A stretch of DNA of 64,000 nucleotides from Dendrobates tinctorius (lineage: Eukaryota), in NCBI RefSeq assembly GCF_039654945.1, contig NW_027361677.1, positions 21,700,001 through 21,764,000 of the forward strand, read 5' to 3'. Shown here piece after piece: positions 5,201-57,793 of this stretch. Position 1 is the stretch's first letter; the number at the start of each line of letters is the position of its first letter. The position numbers were made by a program, and so were the translations under genes. The notes below the pieces were generated by a model that was not told the DNA's origin, searched no databases, and saw only the letters and a list, made by a program, of their open reading frames with translations.

Positions 5201-5847
5201 TCAGTGGTATGATAATAAATCATTATTTTTTGCTTCGTTTTTATTTTTATTTTTTAAGGGGTTCGCTAAAGGGGTTAACTAATGGGACAGTTTTATAGGG
5301 CGGGTCGCTACGGACACTGCGATACCAAATATGTGTACTTTCATTGTTTTTTTTTATTTTCAAAAAATGAATTTGTTGGGGAATATTTTTTTTTTTTCTA
5401 ATTAGCGATTTTTTTAAAATTATTTTTACACTTTTTTTTTTTTCTTTTTTTTTTTTACTTTATTACATAGTCCCAGGTGGGACATCACTATCCTGTGACA
5501 GATCAGCAATCTGTCACAGGCAGTTCTGCAGACTTCCTCATGGAAGTCAGCTCCCTACAGGCCCCCGTTGCCATCTTGGATCCGGGGGCCTGTAGGAAAG
5601 GAGTCCCCCGCAGCAGCGCTGCACATTGCGCTGCCGTGGGGGGCTCAGGGAAGCACGGAGGGAGCCCCCTCCCTGCTGATGCTTCCCTTTAACCCCCGGT
5701 GCACCGCGATCGTGTTTGATCGCGGTGTACAAGGGGTTAACATGTCGGGGGCGGTCCGTGACCGCCCCTGACACATTGTGCCGGGTGTCAGGTGATTATC
5801 ACAGCTGACACCCAGCCGCAATCAGCGGCGCTTACCACGTGGGCGCA
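2285..5847 (-). mobile_element. Non-autonomous TTAA-type (piggyBac-like) element, copy A, both termini missing; internal ~375-390 bp tandem subunits
   Basis: Reverse complement of ~7620-10430. The motif CTTATCTAGAT recurs near 2995, 3369, 3760 and 4150. Confidence 0.8.
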
Positions 5848-12525: not shown

Positions 12526-12676
12526 TTATAGGTGTGTTTCACTTTCTCCCAAAGTGTGCAGAAGGCAGGAGAGCACATGGCTGGGTAACTACAGGGGTAC
12601 CAGGCTCAGTCACTAATATGTGGCTACAGGGGGTGCCACACATGTTGTAAGAGAGCTTTGAGTGAGGTCCAATTTC

Positions 12677-36832: not shown

Positions 36833-37870
36833 CTTCTGGTAAGGTGAGGCAACAAGACAAGGTATGCACTCGGCCCAATGTTACACTATGGGGCAGCCTC
36901 AGAGCTGACATTATTTTCTCATGCTCATTTGCATCTGAGAATCGGATTGCACATCTCCATACACGTCTATGGGTGCGTGTGAAACATCGCACCGCACTCG
37001 GATGTCATCAGAGTGCAGTGCGATTCCCACAGACGCCAGCAACGGAGAAATTACTTTCTCCATCTCCTCCACACCCATGCTGGGATTCTCTCATGTGAGC
37101 GGATCGGAGCACTGACACTCTCAGCAGAGCAGGAGCCGAGGGGCATTAACATATCGCATCTGATGCCATGCGCTACTGTGACTCGGACCTAATAGATGCG
37201 AGCAGGGCTGCCACTAGGAATTTCGGGGCCCCATACTGGCAAAATTTTAGGGGCCCCCTTGAGACTCCGCCCAGGCTCCACCCCAGCCCCTCCTCCACCC
37301 CTCAAACTGTCCACCGTCCCACCGCTCTCTCTTGGAAAAACTGCACGTCTCATCAATCACACATTAACAGTTCCCATTACCAGATCACACATCTAGCCAG
37401 CAGCTCTTGTTTTGGCCAGAAGATTTTTTCAATCTGCCACCACGACAAGGTACACTCTTTTGGCCGGGCCCTACTCTACTCTAACCTATTAAACATTTGC
37501 TAAAATATCCAATACAATTTAGGGATTTTTTTTATTTATTTTTCAATTTTTAAAATGACCAATCATATCACATCCAAAGGGACAAATACCACTGCACCAT
37601 GACCAGACCACATATTACCACCACATAGTGACCTATAATACCACATACAAGGAACAAATACAGCCACACCATCACCAGACCACATATTACTACCATAGTG
37701 ACCGAATAATATCACATATAAGGAACAAATACCACTGCACCATGACCAGACCACATATTACCACCACATAGTGACCTATAATACCACATACATGGAACAA
37801 ATACAGCCACACCATGACCAGACCACATATTACCACCACATATACAGAATAATAGCACATACAAGGGACA

Positions 37871-38050
37871 AATAATAATAATAATTTTTATATAGCGCCA
37901 ACATATTCCGCAGCACTTTACAATTAAGCGGGGACATGTACAGACAATAAATTCAATACAAGTTAAGACAATTCAAACAATGACATTAGGAGTGAGGTCC
38001 CTGCTCGCAAGCTTACAATCTACAAGGAAATGAGGGGACACAGTAGGTGA
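37871..38050 (-). mobile_element. L2 3' tail fragment or L2-dependent SINE
   Basis: Reverse complement resembles 22990-23147 (TGTAAGCTTGCGAGCAGGG; GTGCTGCGGAATATGTTGGCGCTATA; (TAT)n). Confidence 0.8.
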
Positions 38051-38232
38051 GAATACCACCGCACCATGATCAGACCACATATTACCACCACATATTGACC
38101 TATAATACCACATACAAGGAACAAATACAGCCAGACCACATATTACTACCATAGTGACCGAATAATATCACATACAAGGAACAAATACCACTGCACCATG
38201 ACCAGACCACATATTACCACCACATAGTGACC

Positions 38233-39098
38233 TGTTATGAACTCATTTTCGGCTTCACCAGTTGAGTTCCCCTCCCGGTCTCAATATGGTGGTGACAGGA
38301 GGTAGTGAGGTTGGTTTAAGTGGTAGTTATCTGCCACCTGATGAGGAAGATAACAATTGGATCTCTGGAGTATCAGACTGGATATAAGACAGCCGACGCC
38401 CTATCCTAGTGCTGGTGATTCAGTCTGCTTCTCAGGTCCTGGACTTCAGCTCTCTTCCAGTCTTCTCAAGTTAAGTTTGTTTTTTGCTATTGTTCACACT
38501 TGCGCTTGTTGGTCAGTTCAGTTTCTTGTGTGGTCAGCCTGCCCCTGCTGGGGCTATGCTGAATTTCCACTCCTATGTATCAGTATTTGCCAAGCTGCTT
38601 TTTGTCCCTTATTGGATTGGCCTCTTTTTGCTCTGCCTCAGAATATTTCAGAGTGCTGATATAGGTGTAGAAGTCTAGTGACTTCAGGGTTAATTTTGTT
38701 ATCAGAAGTGTTGGACAATATTTTTGTAGGGTTTTTTTGCAGATTGCAGACAGTGTCTTTCCTTTCCTGTCCTGTTTAGTTAGCCGGGCCCCATCATTTG
38801 CTCAGCCTATTTTCCTGCCTTTGTTTGTAATTTCATCTTATTTCACTGTCAATACATGAAGGGAGCTGTCTTTCCTTTGGGGTCTGCTCTTGGGCAGTTA
38901 GTTTTCCTCTTTCCTGCTTTAGGCTTATGTAGCTCTCCGGTTGTGACGAGGTGTCTAGGAACATCGTAGGAACGCTCCACGACTACTGCTAGTTGTGCGG
39001 TTAAGTTCAGGGATCTGCAATCTGCATAGTTACCAACTTCTCTGGTTTTCTGAGACTTAGCTTGTTGTTTTTTCCTCCTCGGTGACCCATTCATAACA
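38233..39098. mobile_element. Solo LTR (Gypsy-like), 866 bp
   Basis: Termini TGTTATGAA...TTCATAACA. Flanks GTGACC / GTGAAC. The satellite unit resumes in register after it. Confidence 0.8.
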
Positions 39099-39439
39099 GT
39101 GAACTATAATACCACATACATGGAACAAATACAGCCACACCATGACCAGACCAAATATTACCACCACAGAGACAGAATAATAGCACATACAAGGGATAAA
39201 TGCCACCACACCATGTCCCAACCGCCTATTACCACCACATGGTGACCAATAATACCACATACAAGTAACAAATACCACCACACCATGACCAGACCACATA
39301 TTACCACCAGTGACAGAATAATAGCACATACAAGGAACAAATACCACGGCACCATGCCCAGACCACACATTACCACCACATGGTGACAGAATACTACAAT
39401 ACTGATCATTAATAAAAAAAAATACTATCACCATAAATG

Positions 39440-40189: not shown

Positions 40190-41130
40190 TGCACCATGTG
40201 TCTCCCATCCTGCCCCGTGTCTCACATTCTTCCCCGTCCTGTGTCTTACTGTCACATTCTGCCCCGTGCCTCACATTCTGCCTCCTCCTGTGTCTGTCAC
40301 ATTCTGCCCCCTCCCGTGTCTCACTGTCACATTCTGCCCCGTGTCTCACATTCTGCCCCCTCCTGTGTCATTGTCGCATTCTGCCCCCTCCTGTCTCACT
40401 GTCACATTCTGCCCCCTCCTGTGTCTTACTGTCACATTCTGCCCCCACCTGTGTCTCACTTGTCGCATTCTCCCCCCTCCTGTGTCACATTCTGCCCCCT
40501 CCTGTGTCTTACTGTCACATTCTGCCCCCTCCTGTGTCTCACTTGTCGCATTCTGCCCCCTCCTGTGTCTTACTGTCACATTCTGCCCCCTCCTGTGTCT
40601 CACTGTCACATTCTGCCCCATGTCCATTCTGCCCCCGTGTCTCACATTCTGCCCCCTCCTGTGTAATTACTGTCACATTCTGCCGCCTCCTGTGTCTCAC
40701 TGTCGCATTCTGCCCCCTACTGTGTCTGTCGCATTCTGCCCCCTCCTGTGTCTTACTATCACATTCTGCCCCCTCCTGTGTCTTACTGTCACATTCTGCC
40801 CCCTCCTGTGTCTTACTGTCACATTCTTCCCCATGTCCATTCTGCCCCCGTGTCTCACATTCTGCCCCCTCCTGTGTCTCACTGTCGCATTCTGCACCCT
40901 CCTGTGTCTCACTGTCACATTCTGCCCCCTCCTGTGTCTCAATGTCACATTCTGCCCCCATGACTCGCATTCTGCCCCCTCCTGTGTCTCACTGTCACAT
41001 TCTGCCCCCTGCTGTGTCTTACTGTCACATTCTGCCATTGTCTTGCATTATGCCCCATGTCTGCATTCTGCCCCCATCATGTCTTGCATTCTGCCCCCAT
41101 CATGTCTTGCATTCTGCCCCCATTTTTCCA
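40190..41130. repeat. ~30 bp minisatellite
   Basis: Unit CACATTCTGCCCCCTCCTGTGTCTCACTGT. Confidence 0.93.
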
Positions 41131-42772
41131 TATTTGCCCCTGTGTGTCTCCAATCCTGCCCCCGAGTCTCCATTCTGCCAGGGAAACATTTTTTGCCCCT
41201 TTCAATAATAAAATAAAATAAAAACTTTTTTCTTACCTGGCCACGCTCCTGTGCTGAAGATGGAGCTGCAGCTGTGTGAGCTGAAAGGACCTGTGGTGAC
41301 GTCATCACCGTGTGATCAGGGGGCGGGCTGATCAATGGTGAAGGCCTGTGGTAATGATGACGTCACCACAGGTCCTTCAGCTCTTCTGTAGCTCTGATGT
41401 CGGCCGCTGTGGCGGCTCAGCTGATGTGTGCTCTGCAGGCTCGGCGCAGCGCACACTTGGGGACCACCTGGCGCCCCATGACACGCAGCACTTGGGGCCC
41501 GATGACTGGAAGCACAGAAGCGGGGCCCCTTCTGTACTGCTGTTCACGGGGCCCCATACAGCAGTAAGGGCTGTCATGCCCTGATGGCGGCCCTGGATGC
41601 GAGTTCTGTAGAACCAGAGGGATTCGTTTTGTGGAGTTTGCTGTGCAGAAAAAGCTTTGATTGTAGAGTTTCTGCTCCAAAAACTCTGTTAAAAAAATAA
41701 TGAATGTGAACTTAAAAACTGGTCATATCACGTGGCTGAACCCGTCCTCAATGCATTTTTTTAGGCTGCTTTCTTTTTAATAGGACTTAATGCACAAAGA
41801 GCTCATGCTGGGATCAGGTGTTATATGAGCATGCTTGTGTGCTGAGTGACTTCAGTGTGATCGGAAATGCCTGCATGTGTTGCGGCTGTCGGAACAACCA
41901 CAAGACATGAAGCTGCTGGGGCTCGAACGTATTTTTTGAGCACGCTGAAGACACAGGACACGAGCATGCCCAGATAACACCTTATCCCAGCACGCTCGCT
42001 CATCACCAGTGCAGACACTTTTGTAATAAATCTGCCATGTATATATACCCTTATAGCTCCATGTTGTATGCAGCCATAAAAGTGCTGCTGATAGTTGCCT
42101 TTATTTTGCCGCTGATACTTTTTTTACTAGATCTAAAACTTTAGAGACAAATTCTATCTGGATTGTGCGCTTGCTTTCCAAGGTTGTTTTTTTTCTTGCT
42201 GCTTTGCAGAGAGTCTAAAGTTAACTTACTAGTGCACAATTACACAAAGGTCGATGCCATAATTGATCGCAGCGGCTGAAATGCATCGAGTATGTGGCAC
42301 ATATTCCCGAAATCCATTTTTCCAGAAGGCAAAAAAAACAGTTTTTCAAGCTGAAACAATTTTTTTTTCTTTTATCCTGAAGATATTTTTGTTATCCTTT
42401 TCATTAACTTATTCTCAGGCAGTTTGATAACATTTTTGCACGTTTTTCGGGTGCTTATTTAGCAATGATTACAATGCGACCCTTTTTTGGGGGAATCACA
42501 AAACATTCCAAAGAGGCCTTTCCCGGCATTTTATTTTAGGATTCCCGTTGACTTCTATTATATACTATGGAACGTCTTCAGAGCAGAAAACGCCTGAAGA
42601 ACGGACCGGTCCCTTCTTTTAACCACTTGGCTTCTTTGGAAACCTAAAGCAATTATTTTTATTTTTTTTTAGATTGAAATGAATAAGAAGATTTCTTTGG
42701 AGTGTTTCCTTGGAGATTGTTCAGAGCGACCCACTTTGAACCTTCTTGGAATTTTTTTTTTTTGTGTGAATG

Positions 42773-43847: not shown

Positions 43848-46800
43848 TCACGGAGCATCTCCTGCCGGAGGCTCAGACACTGCGGACATGGTCTGTGGAT
43901 CCTCCTTTATATTCATTTTCGCATTCTCTATGGATAGTTGAGATTTTTGCGGCTCGGCTTCAAGTTTGGGAAGGATTTCCGGCTCCTTCTGAGGTAAAAT
44001 ACCCTCCAAGGCTTCATGCAGTAGAATCACATTGATAGAACCCAGACTGCCGTAACGGGAGAGGTGAGTGGGGGCGACGCCTGAGCGGGTAAAAAAAAAA
44101 AAAAAAAATCACAACTAAAATAATCACACTACAATGACTATATAACTATGTAAATATATTACAGATGGCTCAGTTACATCCTGTATTATACTCCAGAGCT
44201 GTAGTCACTTCTGTTGGTGCAGTCACTGTGTACACACATTACATTACTGATCCTGAGTTACATCCTGTATTATACTCCAGAGCTGCACTCACTATTCTGC
44301 TGGTGCAGTCACTGTGTACATACATTACATTACTGATCCTGAGTTACATCCTGTATTATACTCCAGAGCTGCACTCACTATTCTGTTGATGCAGTCACTG
44401 TGTACATACATTACTGATCCTGAGTTACATCCTGTATTATACTCCAGAGCTGTAGTCACTATTCTGTTGATGCAGTCACTGTGTACATACATTACTGATC
44501 CTGAGTTACATCCTGTATTATACTCCAGAGCTGTAGTCACTATTCTGTTGATGCAGTCACTGTGTACATACATTACTGATCCTGAGTTACATCCTGTATT
44601 ATACTCCAGAGCTGTAGTCACTATTCTGTTGATGCAGTCACTGTGTACATACATTACTGATCCTGAGTTACATCCTGTATTATACTCCAGAGCTGTAGTC
44701 ACTATTCTGCTGGTGCAGTCACTGTGTACATACATTACTGATCCTGAGTTACATCCTGTATTATACTCCAGAGCTGCACTCACTATTCTGCTGGTGCAGT
44801 AACTGAGTAAATACTTTACTCATCGTGCACTGAATCTGATACGAGTCAAAATCTTGCTGGGTTCTATTGGAAACAGTCAGCAAGCTTGTTGATAATATTT
44901 CTCAGCTACTTGCTATTCCGCATTCTGGCAGAATTCATTTTCTTATACTCAATTAGATGACAATAATTCTTCTCACTACATCCATCTCTGTGTTCACACT
45001 GAATAAGCAGTTAGTGCAGCCAGAGATCAGCTCATCTCCCTACAGAATTATGAATACTGCTCTGCAGGTAAATAGGACAGGTCCCAAGTTGTACTGTACG
45101 ATCAACACCTATTTTATAACAATTTTTTTTTTTACCAAGTATCTGTGCTCTTTGTGCTGGAGGAAAGAGGACCTGTAAGCAGCGGTTCAGATATGGGGTC
45201 AGGTCCTCCAAGAAGACGGTGCAGAATTGGATAAAGAGTTCACGTTCCTGGGGGCTGAACGCAGCTTCCTCGGCTCGGTGAAACGTCAGGATAGAGTTAA
45301 CGACCTATGAAGGAGACAGAGGGAAAAAAAAACAACATGAAAGGTCCTGCATAACTACAACCACCAGTATGCACCAACTGGTGAAAAATAGTAGTTCTGT
45401 AAAAGCTGGAGATTGACAGGTTCTCTTGACAGCACGTTCTCCTAGTGACTCACTGCCGTAATCTCTGTCTTTAGATGGCTGTTGACAGATCCAACCAGTT
45501 TCACAAGATCAGTAAACAGTCAGTATGTTTGAGAAAATCCATACACTCAGGAGCAAACAATCAAAATTACTGTATGTACCTTTTCCAACGCGTCCTGCAG
45601 TGTGTTGGTCACGTCTTCAGTTAGGGCCACAGGACAGCAAAGTCGCAGGTCATTAAAGGCCACCAGGATGTTGTTAAGAAAGCAGGCTAAGGGTGGGAAG
45701 TCCAAGAGAACCATAGGAGGCTGCAGGGTCCCCGGCTGGGCAGGCGGTGTTGGCACCGGTGGGATGCTTGATCCGAGAACTGTCGTGGTGGAGATTAGCG
45801 TATACATGTTCATCTCCTCCTGGAACTTCTCCACTGCCTCCTTTGCTGCCCGTGCAAAGTTCTCGGCAGCCACCCTCTGAAATATGGGTGCTAACTGCCC
45901 ACGGAAATCAGCGCCCACGCGGCTGAACGAGAGTCCAAAATACATGCACTGCCCTAAGAGAGAGTCCAGGCGACTGCCCACCCCTCTCTGAAGATCACGT
46001 TCTAGCACCTGCAGGAACTCGCTCACTTTCTGCAACACCCATCCATGGAATATGGCGCCTTCGCTGATGGGCAAGGAGCCTGCAGGAGTGGGAGGGAGGA
46101 GAAGGGGGTCTTCATCGGAGAAGATGGCCCGGTACTGGGTGATTACATCAAACAGGTGTACGCGGCAGCTCTCAATGGTCTTGGTGAGATGGAAATAAGG
46201 GTCGTCTTGAGGGATGGAGCTCTGCATGGAGCGGAGCCAGGCGTCCCGGGCCTGCAGGAACTTTATCCGCAACTCTGCTTCAGTGAAGACGTCCATCCTG
46301 CGCAGGAAGCTGATCACCCGCAGGCAGGCGGGCAGCTGGATGTTACTGCGCAGCTGCTGCAGGAGCTGGGTCAGCATCAACTGGGCAGACTGACGGACCT
46401 CGTTCACTATGCCCTACAGAGAAGGAGCACACACAGCGTAAGAGGCAGAAAGTTATGTTCTGGTCACAAGATGTCTGCTTGCTGTCAGTGAACAGATAGG
46501 ATAAACATGAGGTCAGCGCTCACACCTGTATGACAGGGATCGACGAGAACTTCTTCTCCAGCCGCTTCACGTAGGCCGCCAGCTCCAGCGCCTCCTCGTA
46601 GTACCCGTTCCGGACACACGTGTCCATCAGCTGCGGGATCTCCAGGATTTCTAGGATCTCAGTGTGTCGGTTCAGAGTCAGCGTGTTCATCCGCCGGCTG
46701 GAGCTGATCTCCTCCGCCTGCTTCACAAACCCCCTGCAGAGAAGAGCCAGATCATGTAAGGTGCAAAGGAGGAGAAGAGAGAGAGTGCAGGGAAGATGGG

Positions 46801-49800
46801 AGTACTAGTGATATACACAACAGCAGGGGATGGGAGTAGTAGTAACAAGGGTAAGACCCAGACGGGATGACAGCAGAGGAATGGGAGTAGTAGTACAAGA
46901 AGTGACCGCAGCAGGAAGGGCATAGTAATGCCATAAGAGACAGGGTGACGGTACCACTAGTAACAAATGGGAGCAGCGGGGACCCAAGCGACAATAGGAT
47001 GACGTGAGTAATAGTGACAGCAGGATGATTGCAGTAGTGGTGAGATGAGTGTCATGACAAACGGGACGGGGAGTAGTGACGGCAGGATGACGGGAGTAGC
47101 GACGGCAGGGTGACGGGAGCAGCGCTCGCCGGGTGACGGGCGTAGCGACGGCAGGGTGACGGAAGCAGCGCTCGCCGGGTGACGGGCGTAGTGACGGCAG
47201 GGTGACGGGAGCAGCGCTCGCCGGGTGACGGGCGTAGTGACGGCAGGGTGACGGGAGCAGCGCTCGCCGGGTGACGGGCGTAGTGACGGCAGGGTGACAG
47301 GAGCAGCGCTCGCCGGGTGACGGGCGTAGTGACGGCTGGGTGCTGGGAGCAGCGCTCGCCGGGTGACGGGTGTAGTAACGGCTGGGTGCTGGGAGCAGCG
47401 CTCGCCGGGTGACGGGATAGAGCTCGCCGGGAGCAGCGCTCGCTGGGAGCAGTAGTCGCTGGGTGATGGGCGTAGTGACAGCAGGGTGCTGGGAGTAGCG
47501 ACGACTGGGTGACGGGTGCAGCGCTCGCCGGGAGTAGTAGTCACCGGGTGACGGGAGCAGTGGTCGCCGGGTGACGGGAGCAGCGCTCGCCGGGAGTAGT
47601 AGTCGCTGGGTGACGGGCGTAGTGACGGCATGGTGACGGGTGCAGCGGTCGCTGGGTGCTGGGAGTAGCAGCCGCCGGGTGACGGGAGCAGTGCTCGCCG
47701 GGTGCTGGGAGTAGTAGTCGCCGGGTGACGGGAGCAGTGCTCGCTGGGTGCTGGGAGTAGTAGTTGCCGGGTGACGGGAGCAGCGCTCGCCGGGAGTAGT
47801 AGTCGCTGGGTGACGGGAGCAGTGCTCGCTGGGTGCTGGGAGTAGTAGTCGCCGGGTGACGGGAGCAGTGCTCGCTGGGTGCTGGGAGTAGTAGTCGCTG
47901 GGTGACGGGAGCAGCGCTCGCCGGGAGTAGTAGTCGCTGGGTGACGGGAGCAGTGCTCGCTGGGTGCTGGGAGTAGTAGTCGCTGGGTGACGGGAGCAGC
48001 GCTCGCCGGGTGCTGGGAGTAGTAGTCGCTGGGTGACGGGAGCAGCGCTCGCCGGGTGCTGGGAGTAGTAGTCGCTGGGTGACGGGAACAGTAGTCGCTG
48101 GGTGATGGGAGCAGTAGTCGCCGGGTGCTGGGAGTAGTGGCCGCCGGGTGACGGGAACAGTAGTCGCCGGGTGACGGGAGCAGTGCTCGCCGGGAGTAGT
48201 AGTCGCTGGGTGACGGGCGTAGTGACGGCAGGGTGCTGGGAGTAGTGGCCGCCGGGTGACGGGAGCAGCGGTCGCCGGGTGACGGGAGCAGCGGTCGCCG
48301 GGTGACGGGAGCAGCGGTCGCCGGGTGACGGGAGCAGCGGTCGCCGGGTGACGGGAGCAGCGGTCGCCGGGTGACGGGAGCAGCGGTCGCCGGGTGACGG
48401 GAGCAGCGGTCGCCGGGTGACGGGAGCAGCGGTCGCCGGGTGACGGGAGCAGCGGTCGCCGGGTGACGGGAGCAGCGGTCGCCGGGAGTAGTAGTCGCTG
48501 GGTGACGGGCGTAGTGACGGCAGGGTGCTGGGAGTAGTGGCCGCCGGGTGACGGGAGCAGTAGTCGCCGGGTGACGGGAGCAGTAGTCGCCGGGTGACGG
48601 GAGCAGTAGTCGCCGGGTGACGGGAGCAGTAGTCGCCGGGTGACGGGAGCAGTAGTCGCCGGGTGACGGGAGCAGTAGTCGCCGGGTGACGGGAGCAATA
48701 GGTGACGGGAGCAGTAGTCGCCGGGTGACGGGAGCAGTGACGGCAGGGTGCTGGGAGTAGTAGTCGCCGGGTGACGGGAGCAGCGCTCGCCGGGAGTAGT
48801 AGTCGCTGGGTGACAGGCGTAGTGACGGCATGGTGACGGGTGCAGCGGTCGCTGGGTGCTGGGAGTAGCGGCCGCCGGGTGACGGGAGCAGTCGTCGCCG
48901 GGTGACGGGAGCAGTCGTCGCCGGGTGACGGGAGCAGTCGTCGCCGGGAGTAGTAGTCGCTGGGTGACGGGAGCAGTGCTCGCTGGGTGCTGGGATTAGT
49001 AGTCGCTGGGTGACGGGAGCAGTGCTCGCCGGGTGCTGGGAGTAGTGGCCGCCGGGTGACGGGAGCAGTGCTCGCCGGGTGCTGGGAGTAGTAGTCGCCG
49101 GGTGACGGGAGCAGCAGTCGCCGGGTGACGGGAGCAGTGACGGCAGGGTGCTGGGAGTAGCGGCCGCCGGGTGACGGGAGCAGCGGCCGCCGGGTGACGG
49201 GAGCAGCGGCCGCCGGGTGACGGGAGCAGCGGCCGCCGGGTGACGGGAGCAGCGGCCGCCGGGTGACGGGAGCAGCGGCCGCCGGGTGACGGGAGCAGCG
49301 GCCGCCGGGTGACGGGAGCAGCGGCCGCCGGGTGACGGGAGCAGCGGTCGCCGGGTGACGGGAGCAGCGGTCGCCGGGTGACGGGAGCAGCGGTCGCCGG
49401 GTGACGGGAGCAGCGGTCGCCGGGAGCAGCGGTCGCCGGGTGACGGGAGCAGCGGTCGCCGGGTGACGGGAGCAGTGACGGCAGGGTGCTGGGAGTAGTA
49501 GTCGCCGGGAGACGGGAGCAGCGCTCGCTGGGAGTAGTAGTCGCTGGGTGACGGGCGTAGTGACGGCATGGTGACGGGTGCAGCGGTCGCTGGGTGCTGG
49601 GAGTAGCGGCCGCCGGGTGACGGGAGTAGTAGTCGCCGGGTGACGGGAGCAGTGCTCGCTGGGTGCTGGGAGTAGTAGTCGCCGGGTGACGGGAGCAGTA
49701 GTCGCCGGGTGACGGGAGCAGCGCTCGCCGGGAGTAGTAGTCGCTGGGTGACGGGAGCAGCGCTCGCTGGGTGCTGGGAGTAGTAGTCGCCGGGTGACGG

Positions 49801-52711
49801 GAGCAGCGCTCGCTGGGTGCTGGGAGTAGTAGTCGCCGGGTGACGGGAGCAGCGCTCGCTGGGTGCTGGGAGTAGTAGTCGCCGGGTGACGGGAGCAGCG
49901 CTCGCCGGGAGTAGTAGTCGCTGGGTGACGGGAGCAGCGCTCGCTGGGTGCTGGGAGTAGTAGTCGCTGGGTGACGGGAGCAGCGCTCGCCGGGTGCTGG
50001 GAGTAGTAGTCGCTGGGTGACGGGAGCAGCGCTCGCCGGGTGCTGGGAGTAGTAGTCGCTGGGTGACGGGAGCAGCGCTCGCCGGGTGCTGGGAGTAGTA
50101 GTCGCTGGGTGACGGGAGCAGCGCTCGCCGGGTGCTGGGAGTAGTGGCCGCCAGGTGACGGGAGCAGTGCTCGCCGGGTGTTGGGAGTAGTAGTCGCCGG
50201 GTGACGGGAGCAGCAGTCGCCGGGTGACGGGAACAGCGCTCGCCGGGAGTAGTAGTCGCTGGGTGACGGGCGTAGTGACGGCAGGGTGCTGGGAGCAGCG
50301 GCCGCCGGGTGACGGGAGCAGCGGGTGACGGGAGCAGCGGGTGACGGGAGCAGCGGGTGACGGGAGCAGTGGTCGCCGGGTGACGGGAGCAGTGGTCGCC
50401 GGGTGACGGGAGCAGTGGTCGCCGGGTGACGGGAGCAGTGGTCGCCGGGTGACGGGAGCAGTGACGGCAGGGTGCTGGGAGTAGTAGTCGCCGGGTGACG
50501 GGAGCAGCGCTCGCCGGGAGTAGTAGTCGCTGGGTGACGGGCGTAGTGACGGCATGGTGACGGGTGCAGCAGTCGCTGGGTGCTGGGAGTAGCGGCCGCC
50601 GGGTGACGGGAGTAGTAGTCGCCGGGTGACGGGAGCAGTGCTCGCTGGGTGATGGGAGTAGTAGTCGCCGGGTGACGGGAGCAGTGCTCGCCGGGTGACG
50701 GGAGCAGTAGTCGCCGGGTGACGGGAGCAGTGGTCGCCGGGTGACGGGAGCAGTGGTCGCCGGGTGACGGGAGCAGTGGTCGCCGGGTGACGGGAGCAGT
50801 GGTCGCCGGGTGACGGGAGCAGTGGTCGCCGGGTGACGGGAGCAGTGGTCGCCGGGTGACGGGAGCAGTAGTCGCCGGGTGACGGGAGCAGCAGTCGCTG
50901 GGTGACGGGAGCAGCAGTCGCTGGGTGCTGGGAGTAGTAGTCGCTGGGTGACGGGAGCAGCGCTCGCCGGGAGTAGTAGTCGCTGGGTGACGGGAGCAGT
51001 GCTCGCTGGGTGCTGGGAGTAGTAGTCGCTGGGTGACGGGAGCAGCGCTCGCCGGGTGCTGGGAGTAGTAGTCGCTGGGTGACGGGAGCAGCGCTCGCCG
51101 GGTGCTGGGAGTAGTAGTCGCTGGGTGACGGGAGCAGCGCTCGCCGGGTGCTGGGAGTAGTAGTCGCTGGGTGACGGGAGCAGCGCTCGCTGGGTGCTGG
51201 GAGTAGTAGTCGCCGGGTGACGGGAGCAGCGCTCGCCGGGAGTAGTAGTCGCTGGGTGACGGGAGCAGTGCTCGCTGGGTGCTGGGAGTAGTAGTCGCTG
51301 GGTGACGGGAGCAGCGCTCGCCGGGTGCTGGGAGTAGTAGTCGCTGGGTGACGGGAGCAGCGCTCGCCGGGTGCTGGGAGTAGTAGTCGCTGGGTGACGG
51401 GAGCAGTGGTCGCCGGGTGACGGGAGCAGTGACGGCAGGGTGCTGGGAGTAGTAGTCGCCGGGTGACGGGAGCAGTGACGGCAGGGTGCTGGGAGTAGTA
51501 GTCGCCGGGTGACGGGAGCAGCGCTCGCCGGGAGTAGTAGTCGCTGGGTGACGGGAGCAGTGCTCGCTGGGTGCTGGGAGTAGTAGTCGCCGGGTGACGG
51601 GAGCAGTGCTCGCTGGGTGACGGGAGCATTAGTCGCTGGGTGACAGGAGCAGCGCTCGCTGGGTGCTGGGAGTAGTAGTCGCTGGGTGACGGGAGCAGCG
51701 CTCGCCGGGTGCTGGGAGTAGTAGTCGCTGGGTGACGGGAGCAGCGCTCGCCGGGTGACGGGAGTAGTAGTCGCCGGGTGACGGGAGTAGTAGTCGCCGG
51801 GTGACGGGAGTAGTAGTCGCCGGGTGACGGGAGTAGTAGTCGCCGGGTGACGGGAGTAGTGGCCGCCGGGTGACGGGAACAGTAGTCGCCGGGTGACGGG
51901 AGTAGCGGCCGCCGGGAGTAGCGGCCGCCGGGTGACGGGAGTAGCGGCCGCCGGGTGACGGGAGTAGCGGCCGCCGGGTGACGGGAACAGCGGCCGCCGG
52001 GTGACGGGAACAGCGGCCGCCGGGTGACGGGAACAGCGGCCGCCGGGTGACGGGAACAGCGGCCGCCGGGTGACGGTGACGGGAGTAGCGGTCGCCGGGT
52101 GACGGGAGTAGCGGTCGCCGGGTGACGGGAGTAGCGGCCGCCGGGTGACGGGAGTAGCGGCCGCCGGGTGACGGGAGTAGCGGCCGCCGGGTGACGGGAG
52201 TAGCGGCCGCCGGGTGACGGGAGTAGCAGTCGCCGGGTGACGGGAGTAGCAGTCGCCGGGTGACGGGAGTAGTAGTCGCCGGATGACGGGAGTAGTAGTC
52301 GCCGGGTGACGGGAGTAGTAGTCGCCGGGTGACGGGAGCAGTAGTCGCCGGGTGACGGGAGTAGTAGTCGCTGGGTGACCTGCAGCTTTCCTGGAGGCCG
52401 GGCAGTTTGCTCAGCAGCCGGGACACGTTGTCCTCCACTTGACTGAAGTCCCGGTAGATGAGCTCGGTGCACTCCGCTGTGCGGATGAACGTCTTGTAGT
52501 GAGTGAACGCCAGGTCCCGGGTCTGCTGCAGGATCTGCGCCCGCTCCTCCGCCAGCCTCTCCGGCTCCCTCCGCAGCTTCTCCACCCCGAAGGAGCTGAG
52601 CTCCAGCAGATAAGCGGCGAAATCCGGGCTGTCCCTCCAGCTCTCCGGAAAGCTGTTCCTGAACACCGAGGCCAGGAGGCTCTCATCTTCCTCCACGTCC
52701 ACCGCCGCCAT
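43848..52711 (-). CDS. COG8: Conserved oligomeric Golgi complex subunit 8 (Dor1 family), 5 exons, 591 aa
   Basis: Exons 52711-52380, 46733-46526, 46413-45580, 45304-45136, 44080-43848; 1776 nt, in frame. Motifs EPERLAEERAQI, LEILEIPQLMDTCVRN, CMYFGLSFSRVGADFR. Confidence 0.96.
44165..44800. repeat. 81/86 bp satellite, ~7.5 copies, COG8 intron 4
   Basis: Unit TGATCCTGAGTTACATCCTGTATTATACTCCAGAGCTGTAGTCACTATTCTGTTGATGCAGTCACTGTGTACATACATTAC. Confidence 0.95.
47060..52379. repeat. 23-bp CpG-rich minisatellite, ~5.3 kb, filling COG8 intron 1
   Basis: Unit CGGGTGACGGGAGCAGTAGTCGC with variant blocks. The 23-aa periodicity of the translations equals three units. Confidence 0.97.
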
Positions 52712-52954
52712 CCTGCTGGAGGGAGACACTGCTTCAACAAAACTTTATCAAATGTGACGTCTACCTTTGTCGCTGGCAAGAAGAAAAACGCACTGATTGG
52801 TTGGTTGCACCGTGACGGTAAAAAAAAAAAAATTGTCGCCATGTTGGTGGAGGCATTGAAACTCGTCAACAATCTTTATTGAAAATGAACAGTCCTTTCC
52901 CAGAGTTCATTGCGAGGCTTCTCTTAGTATCCGCCTGGGTCACACGTGGGAAAG
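52712..52954. promoter_or_regulatory. COG8/NIP7 bidirectional promoter
   Basis: 243 bp between divergent ATGs. CRE-like TGACGT (~52755), inverted CCAAT boxes (~52796), YY1-like CGCCATGTT (~52837). Confidence 0.85.
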
Positions 52955-55900
52955 ATGCGGCCGCTGACTGACGAGGAGACCAAGACCATGTTCGAGAAGC
53001 TCTCCAAATAGTGAGTGCCGGGGCCACTCCGCGGGACGGGGGTTTCCACTCTCTTCATACACCTCTGCTTGCTGGCAGTGAACACAGACGGTTTGTGTGT
53101 TTTTTACGTTCGGTGACAGCAAGCAGAGACTTGGAAAATGAGGAGCAGCAATGGCGGACAGCTGACAGGATCATTATTGTGTACAAAGTGATGATGTGGC
53201 GTAACTTTACCATTGGAGGGGTCTGACCGCCGAGATCACCGCGGATCCTGACAACTAACGTGGCTCCGCTGCCGTGTCTGAATGGAGCTGAGGCGCGGTG
53301 GGCTCGACCTTCTCGCATTTAGAATTTTTCTATTTAGAGCATTTAGAACATTTCTATTTTATTTTTTTAGAGCAAAAAATTGCAAAATTTACATCCAAAA
53401 AAAAAGTTTGTCTTACATAAAAAAGTCTCCGGGGAAGGAGGGACCGCAGTGCTACATCTGCACAAACATTTACTTCTTCTCTTTTCTGTATTATTATTTT
53501 AAAAGTTGTGATTGATGGGAACAAATATCTAGAAAACAACAACCATGACCCCAATGACAATTGTGAACCCCCCCATAAAAATAGACTTAAGGCACAATTT
53601 TAAAGGGATTTGGTGCAGATTAAAAACTAAAGAAAGAAGAGTGTAAATATCATAATGGATCAGGGCTAACGTTTAAGGGACTGGAGGAGAAAGTGGAGCT
53701 CTGAGCTGTTTCCAGCCATCCCGTACATAGTCAATGAATGGCGCAGAGGTCGAGCCTGTGCACCTCTACTTAATTCAAGGCGGGGACCTCTTATGATCAG
53801 CAGGATATCCCTTGCCCTTTGGATTATTTATTTCTACAGTAACATTGATTCCATGGTGCTGTACATGAGAAGGGGAGTTACATACAAATTACAGATATCA
53901 CTTACAGTAAGCAAACTAACAATCACAGACTGATACAGAGGGGAGAGGACCCTGCCCTTGCGGGTTAACATTCTACAGGATGGTATTGAAGGAGATAGTA
54001 GGTTGGGGGGTTGCGGGAGCTCTGGTGTTGGTGAGGTGGTAGCTCCTGTCGTGGTGAGAGGGCAGCGGGGTCATTGCAGGCTGTAAGCTTTCCTGAACAG
54101 GTGGGTTTTCAGGTTCCGTCTGAAGGATCCGAGTGTGGTTGATAGTCGGATGTGTTGGGGCAAAGTATTCCAGAGGATGGGGGATATTCGGGAGAAGACT
54201 TGGAGGCGGTTAGGTGAGGAGAGAATAAGTGTGGAGAAGAGAAGGAGGTCATGGGAGGACTGGAGATTACATGAGGGAAGATATCGGGAGATTAGCTCAG
54301 AGATATATGGAGGAGACAGGTTATAGATGGCCTTGTAGGTCAGTATTAGTAATTTGAACTGGATATGCTGAGGGAATGGGAGCTAGTGACGAGATTTGCA
54401 GAGGGGAGAAGCGGAGGAGTAGTGAGAGAAATGAATTAGTCGGGCAGCAGAGTTAAGGATGGACTGGAGAGGTGCGAGGGTGTTAGCAGGGAGTCCACAG
54501 AAAAGGATGTTGCAGTAGTCGAGGCGGGAGATGATGAGGGCATACACAATTTTAGCAGATTGAGGGTCTAGTAAAGGATGGATTCTGGAAATATTTTTGA
54601 GCTGGAGGCGACAGGAGGTGGAAAGAGCTTAGATGTGTTGTTTGAAGGACAGAACAGAGTCAAGGGTTACTCCTATGCAGCCGATTTCCGGTACGGAGGA
54701 AAGCGTGATGTCGTTAATTGTGATAGAATGGTCAGGTAAGGAAGATCTGTGAGATGGAGGAAAGATAATGAGTTCAAATTTGTCCACATTGAGCTTGAGG
54801 AAGCAAGAGGAGAAGGAGGATATGGCTGATAGACAGTCTTGGATTCTGGACAGCAGAGAGGTGATGTCTGGGCCAGAGAGGAAGATCTCAGTGTCATCAG
54901 CATACAGATAGTCCTGGAAGCCATGGCACTTTGTGTTGCCCCGGACCAAGTGTATAGATTGAGAAGAGTAGGGGTCCTAAAACAGAGCCTTGGGGGACTC
55001 CAACAGAGAGAGGGTGGGATGAGGAGGTGGTGTGGGAGACGCTGAATGTGCGGTTGGAAAGGTATGAGGAGATCCAGGATAGGGCGAGGTCTTTGATGCC
55101 AAACGAGAGGATCTGTAGTATGAGGCAGTAGTCAACTGTGTCGAAGGCAGAGGACGGGTCTAGAAGGAGGAGTATAGAGTATCATCTGTTGGCTTTGGTT
55201 GTAAGTAGGTCGTTAGTAATTTTGGTCAGGGCAGCCTCAGTGGAGTGATTGGGGCGGAAACCAGATTGTAGATTGTCATGGCAAGTTAGATGAGAAGTGG
55301 GAGGAAAGTTCAGCGTGGACGTGCTGCTCCAGGAGTTAGGAAGCGAATGGGAGCAGCAATATTGGACGATAGCTGGACATAGCGGTTGGGATGAGGGTTG
55401 GCTTTTTAAGGATAGGCGTGATTGTGGCTTGTTTGAAAGCAGCAGGGGAAGGTACCAGAAGTTAGTGATAGGTTGAGGAAATGGGTTAGGGATGGGATAA
55501 GAGTGGTGGTGAGGTTGGGGAGGAGATGGGATGGGGTCAAGTGGAGAGGTGTGATTTGGAGAGGAGACATTTAAGCACCCTTTCAGTGTTGTTGGATAGG
55601 GAGGTTATGGGGTTTGGGCATTGGTCTGGTATACGAAGGGGTTGTAGTTGTACAATGAAGACTTGCCTTGTTTGGTCAGTCTTACTTTTGAAGTGTGTGG
55701 CAAAGTCCTCAGCAGAGATGAGGGAAGTTGGAGGGGGCAGTGGTGGTCGGAGGAGGGAGTTAAGTGTTGAATACCTGTTTGGGGTTGTAAGATAGGGAAG
55801 ATACGAGGGTTGTGAAGTAGGCCTGTTTAGCAGAGGTGTGAGCTGATTTGAAAGCGAGTGTTGCGTTTAAGGTGGGTGACAGAAAAAGACTGAACGTCAG

Positions 55901-57793
55901 CAGGGTTGTAGCCCCATTGTTTTGGGGATTGGTGGAGACCCCCCAAAGGTCATAAAGTGATGGCATATCATAATGGTGGAAATTCCCCTTGGTGTAAAAC
56001 CCTTTGATTGTAAAGGTACTGTCACACTTAGCGATGTACTAGCGATCCCGACCAGCGATATGACGCGGTCAGGATCGCTGGTACATCACTAAGTGGTCAC
56101 TAGTGAGCTGCCACACAGGCAGATCTCACCAGCGACACAGCAGCGGTCGTTACTTACCTGTCAGACGAGGCGATCCTGACGTCCTCCTGCCTGCGTCCAC
56201 GCTCGTCTCCACAGCAGGAAGCTGACGACGAGAAGCGGCCCAGGACGTTCTCGCGCGATCAGCGATAACCAGCGGGGGAGCGGTCGGAGGTAAGTATCAG
56301 ACACCGCAATATCGCTAGCAATATCGCTATAACGTCACAAAGACCAGTGACGTTATAGCGATATTGCTAGCGATATCGCTTAGTGTTGACAGGCCCTTAA
56401 TGCTCTTTCCTCTATGACCGGTCAGATATGTTATCATTGAGATGATAGTGGTTGTAGTAGTGCTGATCTTGATGTCTTTGTAAATGGAATCATCCTCTTA
56501 CTTGATCCTTAGCATTGGAGAAAATATAAAGCTTCTCGTGGACCGACCTGATGGGACGTACTGCTTCCGGCTACACAATGACCGTGTGTATTATGTAAGG
56601 TGAGGTAACGGGGGGTCAAAACAAACTTGGACTTTCAGGGGTTATCCTAGGCCTGAGCTGATTGCCACTGATCTAATGACTGTTATGAGGGGGAGGTCTT
56701 GTCACGTTAGAGGGTTAACTAGCACACTGAGATGTTTATCTGCAGCCATTACTATAAGAGGGGCTGTGAATATAAAACGGGACAACTTGTAAAGTCTCCT
56801 TTAATTTTTTTTTAATAAGTGCAATTTTTTTTCTCAGCGAGAGAATGCTGAAACTGGCCACAAATGTCGCCCGAGATAAACTTGTGTCTCTTGGAACCTG
56901 TTTTGGAAAGTTCACCAAGACTCAGAAGTTTCGTCTTCACATTACGGCTCTGGATTACCTGGCGCCGTATGCAAAGGTGATTACGAAATCTCTAATGATT
57001 CGCTGAAACAAAAAGTGACGTACTCTCATCATCCTGCACTGCTGCATGTACCTGACACCTGTCTCTTTACCTCGTAGTACAAGGTGTGGGTGAAGCCTGG
57101 ATCCGAACAGTCTTTTTTATATGGCAACCACATTCTTAAATCCGGACTGGGGAGAATAACGGAGAACACCACACAGTACCAGGGAGTGATCGTCTACTCC
57201 ATGGCCGACGTTCCCTTGGTGAGTATTGCTGCTTCCACGTCATACTAAAAGGTGTTCACATCTAATATTGTGATTATCAGATCCCTTGGGCCAAATTCAG
57301 ACATCTGTATATCGGGGTCCATGAAAGAAGGAAAGGCCTTGGGGTCTCCTGACCCAAACTTTACAGTTTCAGATATGCCTATGAGCCTGTCAAGTTCAAG
57401 TCAGTCTGTATACTGTGGTCTATACCTGGAACGTATATCTGATTGCAGCCTTAGAATATACATTCATGTTATAATCATTGCAGGTTCTGACATTATGAAC
57501 CCCCTCAGTTCTCAGAATGAAGGGCCCCGCAACACTGATGTATGATGTGTGAAGTAACTATGCTATCCTTTCCTTGTCAGGATTGGTGGGGTCCCAACAC
57601 TAGGAAAAAAAAATCCGTTTTGTTAATTTAATCCCAGCTTTCTCTTATATCAGACCTGCTCGTTCCCTTGCAGGGTTTTGGTGTAGCTGCAAAGTCCACA
57701 CAAGAATGTAGGAAACTGGACCCCATGCAGATTGTCGTTTTCCACCAAGCCGACGTTGGAGAATACATCAGACATGAGGACACTTTGACCTAA
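52955..57793 (+). CDS. NIP7: 60S ribosome subunit biogenesis protein NIP7 (PUA domain), 5 exons, 180 aa
   Basis: Exons 52955-53010, 56513-56599, 56838-56976, 57078-57218, 57674-57793; 543 nt. [21 protein letters not shown] ... [22 protein letters not shown] at 57933. Confidence 0.97.
53824..55870 (-). mobile_element. Degenerate L2/CR1-group LINE in NIP7 intron 1
   Basis: [19 protein letters not shown]-type and LLDxSSAFDTV-type segments across frameshifts. 3' tail GAAATAAATAAT. Confidence 0.88.
56014..56397. mobile_element. Harbinger-type MITE
   Basis: TAA duplication. TIR AGGTACTGTCACACTTAGCGAT / ATCGCTTAGTGTTGACAGGCCCT. Confidence 0.85.

What the first reader, a model, noticed from the sequence alone, without database searches (positions are those of the whole stretch)
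47060..52380. 5.3-kb minisatellite starts at base +1 of COG8 intron 1, and the splice donor is part of the repeat unit
Seen: exon 1 ends TGC-AG|GTCACCCAGCGACTACT. The donor GT is the GT of the unit's GTCACC, so a weak donor is followed by well over a hundred CC|GTCACC look-alikes. The sense strand is nearly stop-free: the exon-1 frame runs ~250 extra codons to 51629, and other frames stay open for 870-1158 codons of Pro/Arg/Thr/Ser-rich sequence. The array is very CpG-dense and begins ~330 bp from a promoter shared by two housekeeping genes. Inference: a natural, tolerated analogue of intronic repeat-expansion loci, with possible intron retention, repeat translation, R-loops/G4 and methylation spread.
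Basis: partly seen in the sequence, partly recalled or inferred. Interest (0 to 1): 0.7.

Follow-up and report, generated by a model that had tools for sequence, protein, structure and literature searches.

The report
Old minisatellite filling frog COG8 intron
Almost all of the first intron of the poison frog's COG8 gene is a 23-base tandem repeat that starts at the intron's first base, yet transcripts splice normally and other frog families carry a related repeat at the same spot, so it is an old, tolerated minisatellite of a known kind and not a new device.

Summary
On the minus strand, COG8 exon 1 ends at 52380. A 23-nt, about 231-unit, 70% GC array (47060-52379) begins at intron base +1 and supplies the intronic half of the donor, CAG|GTCACC. 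The long sense-strand ORFs and the CpG density are as described.

- Contigs from four runs join exon 1 at 52380 to exon 2, as in NCBI's model.
- The 158 CCC|GTCACC look-alikes lack the exonic AG (4 of 9 U1 matches against 6 of 9).
- Freedom from stops is expected for such a C-rich unit (P about 0.75) and is not kept in other frogs.
- The G-runs lie on the template strand, and the RNA has no GGG.

The new result is comparative. Related arrays fill COG8 intron 1 in Hyla, Eleutherodactylus and Rhinoderma. Mixophyes has an array in the same place that is probably related. Gastrophryne has one that repeats the whole exon-intron junction at least 12 times. The hyloid donor was already weak (GTCCTGA).

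The most likely reading is a long-lived, nearly neutral minisatellite next to a promoter. It is a relative of the human F7 IVS7 VNTR. This scan already reported splice-donor arrays of the same kind in ROGDI and GALNT16 of this genome. Intron retention, methylation and allele length remain untested.

The parts
52380..52727 (-). COG8 exon 1 (ATG at 52711; the 5' ends of contigs reach 52710-52727)
   Evidence: The translation matches COG8 and is 100% identical to NCBI's D. tinctorius COG8.
52374..52382 (-). 5' splice site CAG|GTCACC; the cut lies between 52380 and 52379
   Evidence: Read directly. Contigs of X1, X2, X17 and X19 end here and continue with exon 2 letters. The position has a 1-nt ambiguity because both the intron and exon 2 start with G.
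47060..52379 (-). 23-nt minisatellite of about 231 units, with 46-nt and 39-nt higher-order variants. It is C-rich on the sense strand.
   Evidence: There are 40 distinct 23-mers among 169 anchored units. Lag-23 identity is 0.97 at the donor end and falls toward the acceptor.
46760..47059 (-). Decayed older units at the 3' end of the intron
   Evidence: This stretch matches the intron 1 arrays of Rhinoderma (best E 1e-7; 11 hits at E<=0.01) and Hyla (best E 5e-6; 29 hits), all on the same strand.
46734..46759 (-). Polypyrimidine tract and acceptor CAG of intron 1
   Evidence: It is the only YAG in the intron with at least 12 of 15 pyrimidines upstream.
46526..46733 (-). COG8 exon 2
   Evidence: Translated, boundaries read, and its first 23 letters appear as the loose end.
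52728..52943 (.). Intergenic stretch between the head-to-head genes COG8 and NIP7 (presumed bidirectional promoter)
   Evidence: No contig from any laid run covers it. The same head-to-head arrangement with NIP7 is seen in 7 other frogs.
52944..53010 (+). NIP7 exon 1 (ATG 52955)

Best explanation
This is a real, old and fast-evolving GC-rich minisatellite. It has occupied COG8 intron 1 since at least the common ancestor of hyloid frogs, and probably since before the split from myobatrachids.

In the Dendrobates lineage the array was re-homogenised into a 23-nt unit. That unit has overwritten the short unique leader seen in relatives (21-28 nt in Hyla, Eleutherodactylus and Mixophyes) right up to intron base +1. 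The unit contains a single GT, so the observed register is the only one that keeps a usable donor. Selection on the coding exon fixes the boundary at +1.

Splicing is normal. The authentic site is the first one, it is cap-proximal, and it is the only one preceded by the exonic AG. The look-alikes carry CCC at positions -3 to -1.

The array is most likely a nearly neutral by-product of unequal exchange, gene conversion or slippage beside a CpG-rich bidirectional promoter. In frogs, which appear to lack PRDM9, promoters are the expected sites of meiotic breaks.

Shown here: the anatomy, the splice junction, and the relatedness of the arrays across families. Inferred: how the array reached +1, the recombination driver, and neutrality.
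For: Anatomy.

Splicing: the junction between exon 1 (ending at 52380) and exon 2 appears in contigs of X1, X2, X17 and X19. The annotated protein has the same junction.

Donor strength: the authentic site has 6 of 9 U1 matches. 191 of the 221 intronic GT sites have 4 of 9, and only one other site reaches 6 of 9.

Related arrays in intron 1 and nowhere else in the loci: Rhinoderma 37 nt x30, Hyla 28 nt x101, E. coqui 25 nt x80 plus 35 nt x239, Mixophyes 39 nt x53.

Unit similarity to the Hyla unit: z = 13.8 (E. coqui 25-mer), 6.3 (Rhinoderma), 5.9 (D. tinctorius), 5.9 (E. coqui 35-mer).

The decayed 3' tail of the D. tinctorius intron: every hit at E<=0.01 in the Rhinoderma and Hyla loci falls in intron 1 on the same strand. 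It also matches the Mixophyes unit at z=5.9, while control arrays from this window score z near 0.

Homogenisation reaches the boundary: the first unit is identical to the commonest variant, which has 34 copies across the array.

Assembly: the published D. tinctorius assembly used HiFi reads longer than 10 kb, and the array has structured internal variants.

PRDM9 was not found in amphibians (PMC5519329).
Against: Neutrality is assumed, not shown. The array's persistence across families, the invariant CACC core and a CpG o/e of 1.12 (against 0.01-0.77 in the other frogs) could reflect function or protection from methylation.

Array-unit contigs are present in RNA-like runs: depth 16-97 per contig against 27 for the exon in X19, and 4.3 against 18 in X1. 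X19-X23 hold about half of the sampled words of 45400-53100. Some intronic RNA, or traces of DNA, is therefore present, and retention cannot be excluded.

Relatedness to the Mixophyes and Gastrophryne arrays rests on weak similarity plus position.

The polarity toward the promoter is not universal: in E. coqui the most homogeneous block is the distal one.
Confidence: 0.72

Rival explanations
1. The array is a selected cis-regulatory element. It would act as a promoter-proximal block of transcription-factor half-sites (CGTCA/TGACG in each D. tinctorius unit; a full TGACGTCA in each Rhinoderma unit), or as a C-rich intronic splicing enhancer that supports an ancestrally weak donor.
For: The locus persists across frog families with a conserved GTCAC core. 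A full CRE sits in the Rhinoderma unit and in a Mixophyes promoter repeat. The weak GTC donor is conserved in Rhinoderma, Hyla, Eleutherodactylus, Mixophyes and Spea. The D. tinctorius array meets CpG-island sequence criteria over 5.3 kb.
Against: Unit length and most of the unit sequence turn over freely (23 to 39 nt). Hyla has lost essentially all CpGs (o/e 0.01), and with them the CGTCA form of the motif. Pristimantis carries an unrelated purine-rich array. Pyxicephalus (199-nt intron), Spea and Xenopus do without any array. No binding or expression data exist.
Confidence: 0.12
2. This is the first reader's view: the array behaves like an intronic repeat-expansion locus and produces measurable intron retention, cryptic donor use, repeat-peptide translation, R-loops or G4 structures, and spreading methylation.
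For: The donor is weak (6 of 9 U1 matches). Read-through is open for about 249 codons. Array-unit contigs occur in RNA-like runs. Long-loop G4 motifs occur 107 times on the template strand. Variation between units is dominated by CpG transitions, which suggests some germline methylation.
Against: Only the canonical junction was assembled, in four runs. No shown contig bridges exon 1 into the array. The look-alike donors are weaker than the real one. The RNA has no GGG, and only 2 canonical G4 motifs exist. Open frames are expected by chance (P=0.75) and are not conserved between species. A retained intron would end at a premature stop and would be expected to be degraded (general knowledge of nonsense-mediated decay).
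Confidence: 0.1
3. The length of the array is an assembly artefact (expansion or mis-join).
For: No DNA reads could be laid on the array itself. Short-read contigs break inside it.
Against: The array has 40 distinct unit variants in ordered blocks, higher-order 46- and 39-nt domains and a decayed tail. Unit variants are recovered independently in other runs. The published assembly used HiFi reads longer than 10 kb, which exceeds the array length. Orthologous arrays of 1-10 kb exist in four other assemblies.
Confidence: 0.03

Closest known systems
Human F7 intron 7 37-bp VNTR (Borensztajn et al. 2006, PMC1557585)
   Same: It is a minisatellite that begins at an exon-intron boundary, so the authentic donor is followed by repeated donor-like sites. 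Only the most upstream site is used. The array is tolerated in a normally expressed gene.
   Different: In F7 the first unit spans the boundary, so the pseudo-sites are identical to the real donor, and there are only a handful of units. In D. tinctorius COG8 only the intronic half of the donor is in the unit, the look-alikes lack the exonic AG, and there are about 231 units filling 94% of the intron. The Gastrophryne COG8 ortholog is a true F7-type case.
Splice-donor minisatellites in ROGDI intron 8 and a GALNT16 intron of the same genome (scan notes s1-376887 and s1-376881)
   Same: They come from the same genome, they are arrays that start at a donor, and their follow-ups also judged them tolerated by-products with only the first donor in use.
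   Different: Those units copy the exon end plus the donor (13-21 copies). The COG8 unit copies no exon sequence, is ten times more numerous, lies in a first intron beside a promoter, and is shown here to be shared across frog families. I did not re-examine those loci.
Intron 1 repeat-expansion loci such as C9orf72 GGGGCC (general knowledge, not tested here)
   Same: Both are GC-rich, CpG-dense repeats in a first intron close to a promoter.
   Different: The C9orf72 repeat is G-rich on the sense strand, forms RNA and DNA G4 structures and R-loops, and is pathogenic when expanded. Here the sense strand is C-rich and has no GGG, the unit is 23 nt, and the large array is the normal, ancient state.
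Classical GC-rich hypervariable minisatellites with polar mutation next to a recombination hotspot (Jeffreys and colleagues; recalled from memory, not checked here)
   Same: The unit is 10-100 bp and GC-rich with strand asymmetry. Variant units are interspersed. One end is more homogeneous than the other; here it is the donor and promoter end.
   Different: Polymorphism and germline mutation were not measured here. The human loci are mostly subtelomeric and short-lived, whereas this locus is shared across frog families.

Membership tests
Minisatellite / VNTR | Head-to-tail tandem array with a unit of about 10-100 bp | tested here: met
   Period 23, 216 copies plus further units, in total about 231.
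Minisatellite / VNTR | Interspersed variant units and higher-order structure | tested here: met
   40 distinct 23-mers; blocks with 46-nt and 39-nt periodicity.
Minisatellite / VNTR | Copy number varies between individuals | not tested
   The read tool turns away long repeats and allows only one call, so no allele lengths were obtained.
Splice-donor minisatellite (F7 IVS7 type) | The first unit spans the exon-intron boundary, so the unit contains exon sequence | tested here: not met
   The last 23 exon bases match the unit in register at 6 of 23 positions. In the Gastrophryne ortholog the feature is met: the array starts 19 nt inside exon 1.
Splice-donor minisatellite (F7 IVS7 type) | Downstream pseudo-donors are identical to the authentic donor | tested here: not met
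   The authentic site is CAG|GTCACC. 158 look-alikes are CCC|GTCACC, identical only from +1 to +6.
Splice-donor minisatellite (F7 IVS7 type) | Only the most upstream donor is used | tested here: met
   Contigs of four runs join 52380 to exon 2, and no other junction was seen. Contigs drop rare forms, so minor use is not excluded.
Repeat-expansion locus with sense-strand G4 or R-loop (C9orf72-like) | G-rich sense strand able to form a G-quadruplex or R-loop | tested here: not met
   The sense strand has 0 GGG runs. The 445 GGG runs are on the template strand, with 2 canonical G4 motifs.
Repeat-expansion locus with sense-strand G4 or R-loop (C9orf72-like) | Repeat-derived RNA retained and translated | tested here: inconclusive
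   Array-unit contigs are present in RNA-like runs, but none bridges from exon 1. No translation data are available.
CpG island | Sequence criteria: GC above 0.55, CpG o/e above 0.65, length above 500 bp | tested here: met
   GC 0.68-0.77 and CpG o/e 1.14 over 5.3 kb.
CpG island | Unmethylated in the germline | not testable with these tools
   The only evidence is indirect and points both ways: o/e is high, yet most variable columns are CpG-to-CpA or CpG-to-TpG changes.

The most novel reading that the evidence does not exclude
The COG8 intron 1 array is not just tolerated. On this reading, selection has kept it across neobatrachian frogs since before the hyloid-myobatrachid split (on the order of 100 million years by my recollection of published frog timetrees). 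It would act as a promoter-proximal element: an amplified bZIP/CRE-type site block, or a C-rich enhancer that lets a chronically weak first donor work. The D. tinctorius version would be kept unmethylated as a 5-kb extension of the CpG island.
Probability: 0.12. Interest if true: 0.6.

Novelty: new member of a known kind. Interest (0 to 1): 0.4.

Why it matters
The locus is a natural experiment in choosing a 5' splice site. A weak, cap-proximal donor is followed by about 160 copies of its own intronic half, and the Gastrophryne ortholog has at least 12 complete copies of the junction. Together with the F7 work, these frog loci could test the scanning or first-site rule outside mammals.

The comparative result is the more unusual one. 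Noncoding minisatellites are usually thought of as short-lived, yet this one has stayed in the same intron across several frog families while its unit length changed from 23 to 39 nt. This genome also holds arrays in TERF2, ROGDI and GALNT16. That suggests arrays next to promoters or donors are a systematic feature of large frog genomes, possibly tied to promoter-directed recombination in animals without PRDM9.

For annotation, the practical message is that the COG8 model is correct and the long ORFs are not genes.

Tried and rejected
- Repeat translation: rejected as evidence. A random circular 23-mer of this composition lacks stops with P=0.75, and the orthologous units in Rhinoderma, Mixophyes and Gastrophryne carry stops.
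- RNA G4 or sense-strand R-loop: rejected, because the sense strand has no GGG.
- Cryptic acceptors: there are 117 YAG sites, but only the real acceptor has a pyrimidine tract.
- Array extending into the exon: rejected (6 of 23 in-register matches).
- Known structured RNA in the intron: Rfam finds nothing in 45000-54000.
- A generic frog C-rich repeat family as the source of the cross-species similarity: partly rejected. In the nine other loci examined (Staurois was checked only within intron 1), arrays of this type occur only in intron 1. Window control arrays score z near 0 against the D. tinctorius tail. One control (the 30-nt array at 40346) does reach z=3.3 against the Hyla unit, so weak similarity alone is not proof. 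I therefore treat Mixophyes and Gastrophryne as probable, not shown.
- A single-copy seed in Spea or Xenopus: only marginal (p 0.006-0.05).
- Two protein look-ups returned no record (Engystomops P0004 and Pseudophryne P0010).
- I did not send the array itself to read laying, because that tool states that it turns away long repeats. Only its first 60 nt were included, so retention, internal junctions and allele length were not measured.
Exons were searched separately by reference. The only joined operation was a frame check, using the last exon 1 letters with exon 2.
- MaxEnt-type splice scores were not available, so U1 complementarity counts were used instead.
Full report
**What is there.** The window comes from the dyeing poison frog. 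Exon 1 is 100% identical to NCBI's COG8 of Dendrobates tinctorius (P0001), and an earlier scan note names the same species. COG8 lies on the minus strand.
- Exon 1 runs from about 52727 (ATG 52711) to 52380 and ends ...GCTGCAG.
- Intron 1 is 46734-52379 (5646 nt).
- Exon 2 is 46526-46733.
- NIP7 lies head to head on the plus strand (ATG 52955, exon 1 to 53010).
- Between the 5' ends of the two genes' contigs lie only about 216 nt, and no contig covers them.

**The array.** TRF finds a period-23 array at 47529-52379 with 216 copies, plus further units back to about 47060. Its last base is the first base of the intron.
- In the sense orientation the intron opens with a complete 23-nt unit that begins GTCACC. 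This first unit is identical to the commonest variant in the array, which has 34 copies spread over its whole length.
- The last 23 exon bases match the unit in register at only 6 of 23 positions. The repeat therefore stops at +1.
- There are about 231 units and 40 distinct 23-mers among the 169 anchored units. Blocks of 46- and 39-nt higher order are present.
- Lag-23 identity is 0.97 at the donor end and decays to 0.5-0.7. The last roughly 330 nt before the acceptor are degenerate relics. The whole intron is therefore repeat-derived apart from the polypyrimidine tract and acceptor.
- GC is about 0.70, CpG o/e is 1.14 with 650 CpGs, and the sense strand is C-rich (GC skew about -0.38).

**Splicing.** I laid contigs of four runs on 52320-53400. 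I left the array itself out because the tool turns away long repeats.
- In X1 and X2 (organism A), X17 (organism B, a close relative about 99% identical in exon 1) and X19, a contig covers exon 1 down to 52380/52379. It then continues with 23 letters that are exactly the start of exon 2 (window 46711-46733).
- X19 also shows the spliced NIP7 exon 1, and none of the runs covers the intergenic stretch or the NIP7 intron. These runs therefore behave as RNA.
- NCBI's protein has the same junction (...QESCR|GFVK...).
- Short array-unit contigs are present too, at depth 16-97 per contig against 27 for the exon in X19, and 4.3 against 18 in X1. X19-X23 hold about half of the sampled words of 45400-53100, although exons make up only about 19% of that stretch.
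- Individual unit variants occur up to 34 times in the array. These depths therefore fit ordinary nascent or lariat RNA, or traces of DNA, and do not show retention.
- No shown contig bridges exon 1 into the array. Five records were not displayed, and contigs drop rare forms.

**Why the right donor is chosen.** The authentic site, CAG|GTCACC, matches the U1-complementary consensus at 6 of 9 positions. Of the 221 GT sites inside the intron, 191 match at 4 of 9 (158 are CCC|GTCACC), and only one other reaches 6 of 9. The look-alikes share only the intronic half of the donor and lack the exonic AG. The real site is also the first one and is close to the cap. That agrees with the 5'-to-3' first-site rule shown experimentally for the human F7 intron 7 VNTR (PMC1557585). 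Among the 117 YAG sites, only the real acceptor has a pyrimidine tract.

- Freedom from stops follows from the unit's composition. A random circular 23-mer of the same composition has no stop trinucleotide with probability 0.75. It is not conserved either: sense-strand stop density is 1.2 per kb here, but 28 in Rhinoderma, 27 in Mixophyes and 22 in Gastrophryne.
- The sense strand and the RNA have no GGG at all. The 445 GGG runs lie on the template strand, where only 2 motifs have loops of 7 nt or less and 107 need loops of up to 15 nt. An RNA G4 or a sense-strand R-loop of the C9orf72 kind is therefore not expected.
- Most variable unit columns are CpG-to-CpA or CpG-to-TpG changes. This hints at some germline methylation, but methylation cannot be measured here.

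**Comparative result.** I searched with the exon 1 part of the mechanical ORF and fetched COG8 loci of ten other frogs. I located exons 1 and 2 separately by tblastn and built no joined model.

| Species | Intron 1 length (nt) | Arrays found |
|---|---|---|
| Hyla sarda | 3528 | 28 nt x101, starting at intron nt 22 |
| Eleutherodactylus coqui | 10636 | 25 nt x80 from nt 28, then 35 nt x239 |
| Rhinoderma darwinii | 1765 | 37 nt x30; degenerate units from about nt 40 |
| Mixophyes fleayi | 2884 | 39 nt x53, with arrays from nt 29 |
| Pristimantis | 1388 | An unrelated purine-rich array |
| Gastrophryne carolinensis | 3900 | 73 nt x about 15, then 51- and 52-nt arrays |
| Pyxicephalus | 199 | None |
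| Spea | 387 | None of this type (only a short TG/TA simple repeat at nt 300-375) |
| Xenopus laevis | 2724 | None with 3 or more copies (three 2-3 copy repeats) |
| Staurois | 9918 | Only an 18 nt x2.5 proto-repeat at nt 7-50 |

(Sources.)

- Within each locus examined in full, arrays of this type occur only in intron 1.
- All of the arrays except the one in Pristimantis are C-rich on the sense strand.
- They share a GTCAC core followed by a CTACTGC-type block.

**Are the arrays related?**
- Compared with shuffles, the Hyla unit matches the E. coqui 25-mer (z=13.8), the Rhinoderma unit (6.3), the D. tinctorius unit (5.9) and the E. coqui 35-mer (5.9).
- The decayed 3' tail of the D. tinctorius intron gives 11 blastn hits at E<=0.01 in the Rhinoderma locus and 29 in the Hyla locus. 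All fall in intron 1 on the same strand, although intron 1 is only 19% and 10.5% of those loci.
- The same tail aligns over about 1.5 units to the Mixophyes 39-mer (z=5.9), while two control arrays from this window score z near 0. In the Mixophyes locus, 70 of 98 weak hits fall in intron 1 (8% of the locus), all on the same strand.
- I take relatedness across Hyloidea as shown. For Mixophyes it is probable. For Gastrophryne it rests mainly on position.
- One control array reaches z=3.3 against the Hyla unit, so weak scores alone are not proof.

**How the array came to touch the donor (inference).** Rhinoderma, Hyla and E. coqui share the donor CAG|GTCCTGA. Mixophyes has GTCCGGA and Spea has GTCCGTA. 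A weak donor with C at +3 is therefore ancestral, and the repeat-supplied GTCACC is no weaker: it has 6 of 9 U1 matches, against 5 of 9 by my own count of the GTCCTG sequence shown. In the relatives a unique leader of 21-28 nt separates the donor from the array, and in D. tinctorius that leader is gone. The unit has one GT, so any unequal exchange or deletion that brings the array up to the exon is viable only in the observed register. The first unit equals the commonest variant, which shows that homogenisation now reaches the boundary.

**Gastrophryne.** In Gastrophryne the duplication went further. The 73-nt unit starts 19 nt inside exon 1 and repeats the exon tail plus CCG|GTGAGC at least 12 times. 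The annotated protein still has the first-donor junction. That locus is a true F7-type case.

**Mechanism and status.** The best-supported reading is a long-lived, nearly neutral minisatellite kept in motion by unequal exchange, conversion or slippage. PRDM9 was not found in amphibians (PMC5519329). In vertebrates without it, recombination is directed to promoter-like features, according to that paper. An array 350 nt from a CpG-rich bidirectional promoter would therefore sit beside a likely break hotspot. The higher homogeneity at the promoter end in D. tinctorius and Hyla fits this. E. coqui does not fit, so the link remains an inference.

An assembly artefact is unlikely, for three reasons: the array has ordered internal variants, orthologous arrays of 1-10 kb exist in other assemblies, and the published assembly used HiFi reads longer than 10 kb. 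I could not confirm that the window comes from that exact assembly.

A regulatory role cannot be excluded. Candidates are the CRE-type half-sites (full TGACGTCA in Rhinoderma units) or a C-rich splicing enhancer. No data support it, and the free turnover of unit length, of CpG content (o/e 0.01 in Hyla against 1.12 here) and even of array type (Pristimantis) argues against it.

**Novelty.** The kind is known. The closest case is human F7 IVS7. Scan notes s1-376887 (ROGDI) and s1-376881 (GALNT16) report splice-donor arrays elsewhere in this same genome and name further human examples, which I did not check. This case differs in three ways: only the intronic half of the donor is in the unit, the array is very large and sits in a first intron beside a promoter, and the locus is shared across frog families. 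I rate it a new member of a known kind, of moderate interest. The interest lies mainly in the cross-family persistence and in the pair of natural splice-site experiments (Dendrobates and Gastrophryne).

Noticed in passing
L008:2317-3459 (Gastrophryne carolinensis COG8): A 73-nt array starts 19 nt inside exon 1 and repeats the exon tail plus the strong donor CCG|GTGAGC at least 12 times. It is followed by 51- and 52-nt arrays that fill the 3.9-kb intron. The annotated protein uses the first-donor junction.
   Followed up: partly
window 12675-14337, 35107-36434, 37556-39397, 40206-41163, 44145-44824, 2719-4503: The window holds at least six further minisatellite or tandem arrays, with units of 42, about 32, about 70, 30, 81 and 389 nt. 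Several are C-rich on the plus strand. The genome is very rich in such arrays, and the 30-nt unit at 40346 has weak similarity to the Hyla COG8 unit (z=3.3).
   Followed up: partly
L002 intron 1 (2357-5884) versus window 47060-52379: The orthologous Hyla array has CpG o/e 0.01, while the D. tinctorius array has 1.12. The other frogs lie between these values (0.17-0.77). This points to very different germline methylation histories for the same locus.
   Followed up: no
L004:1773-2006 (Mixophyes, between NIP7 and COG8): A 56-nt x4.2 repeat in the promoter and 5' end region carries a full TGACGTCA site. The same CTGACGTCACC string is the core of the Rhinoderma intron 1 unit.
   Followed up: no
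window 52320-52379, runs X1 and X19-X23: RNA-like runs, which show spliced COG8 and NIP7 contigs and no intergenic coverage, still hold array-unit contigs. X19-X23 hold about half of the sampled words of 45400-53100. The source could be nascent RNA, a stable lariat or traces of DNA, and this is unresolved.
   Followed up: partly
P0001 (NCBI COG8 isoform X3, D. tinctorius); also P0006, P0010, P0014, P0025: Several frog COG8 isoforms end in a peptide deformylase domain (PF01327). This indicates COG8-PDF read-through transcripts in frogs. In Spea, PDF lies just downstream of COG8 (L009:6130-6993).
   Followed up: no
window 54000-56000: There is a strong positive GC skew (0.42-0.58) on the plus strand with no tandem repeat detectable by TRF, even at score 30.
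   Followed up: partly
Intron 1 donor in L001-L004 and L009: A weak donor with C at +3 (GTCCTGA, GTCCGGA or GTCCGTA) is conserved from Spea through the hyloids. The ranoids Pyxicephalus and Staurois and Xenopus have GTA, and Gastrophryne and Pristimantis have GTG.
   Followed up: partly
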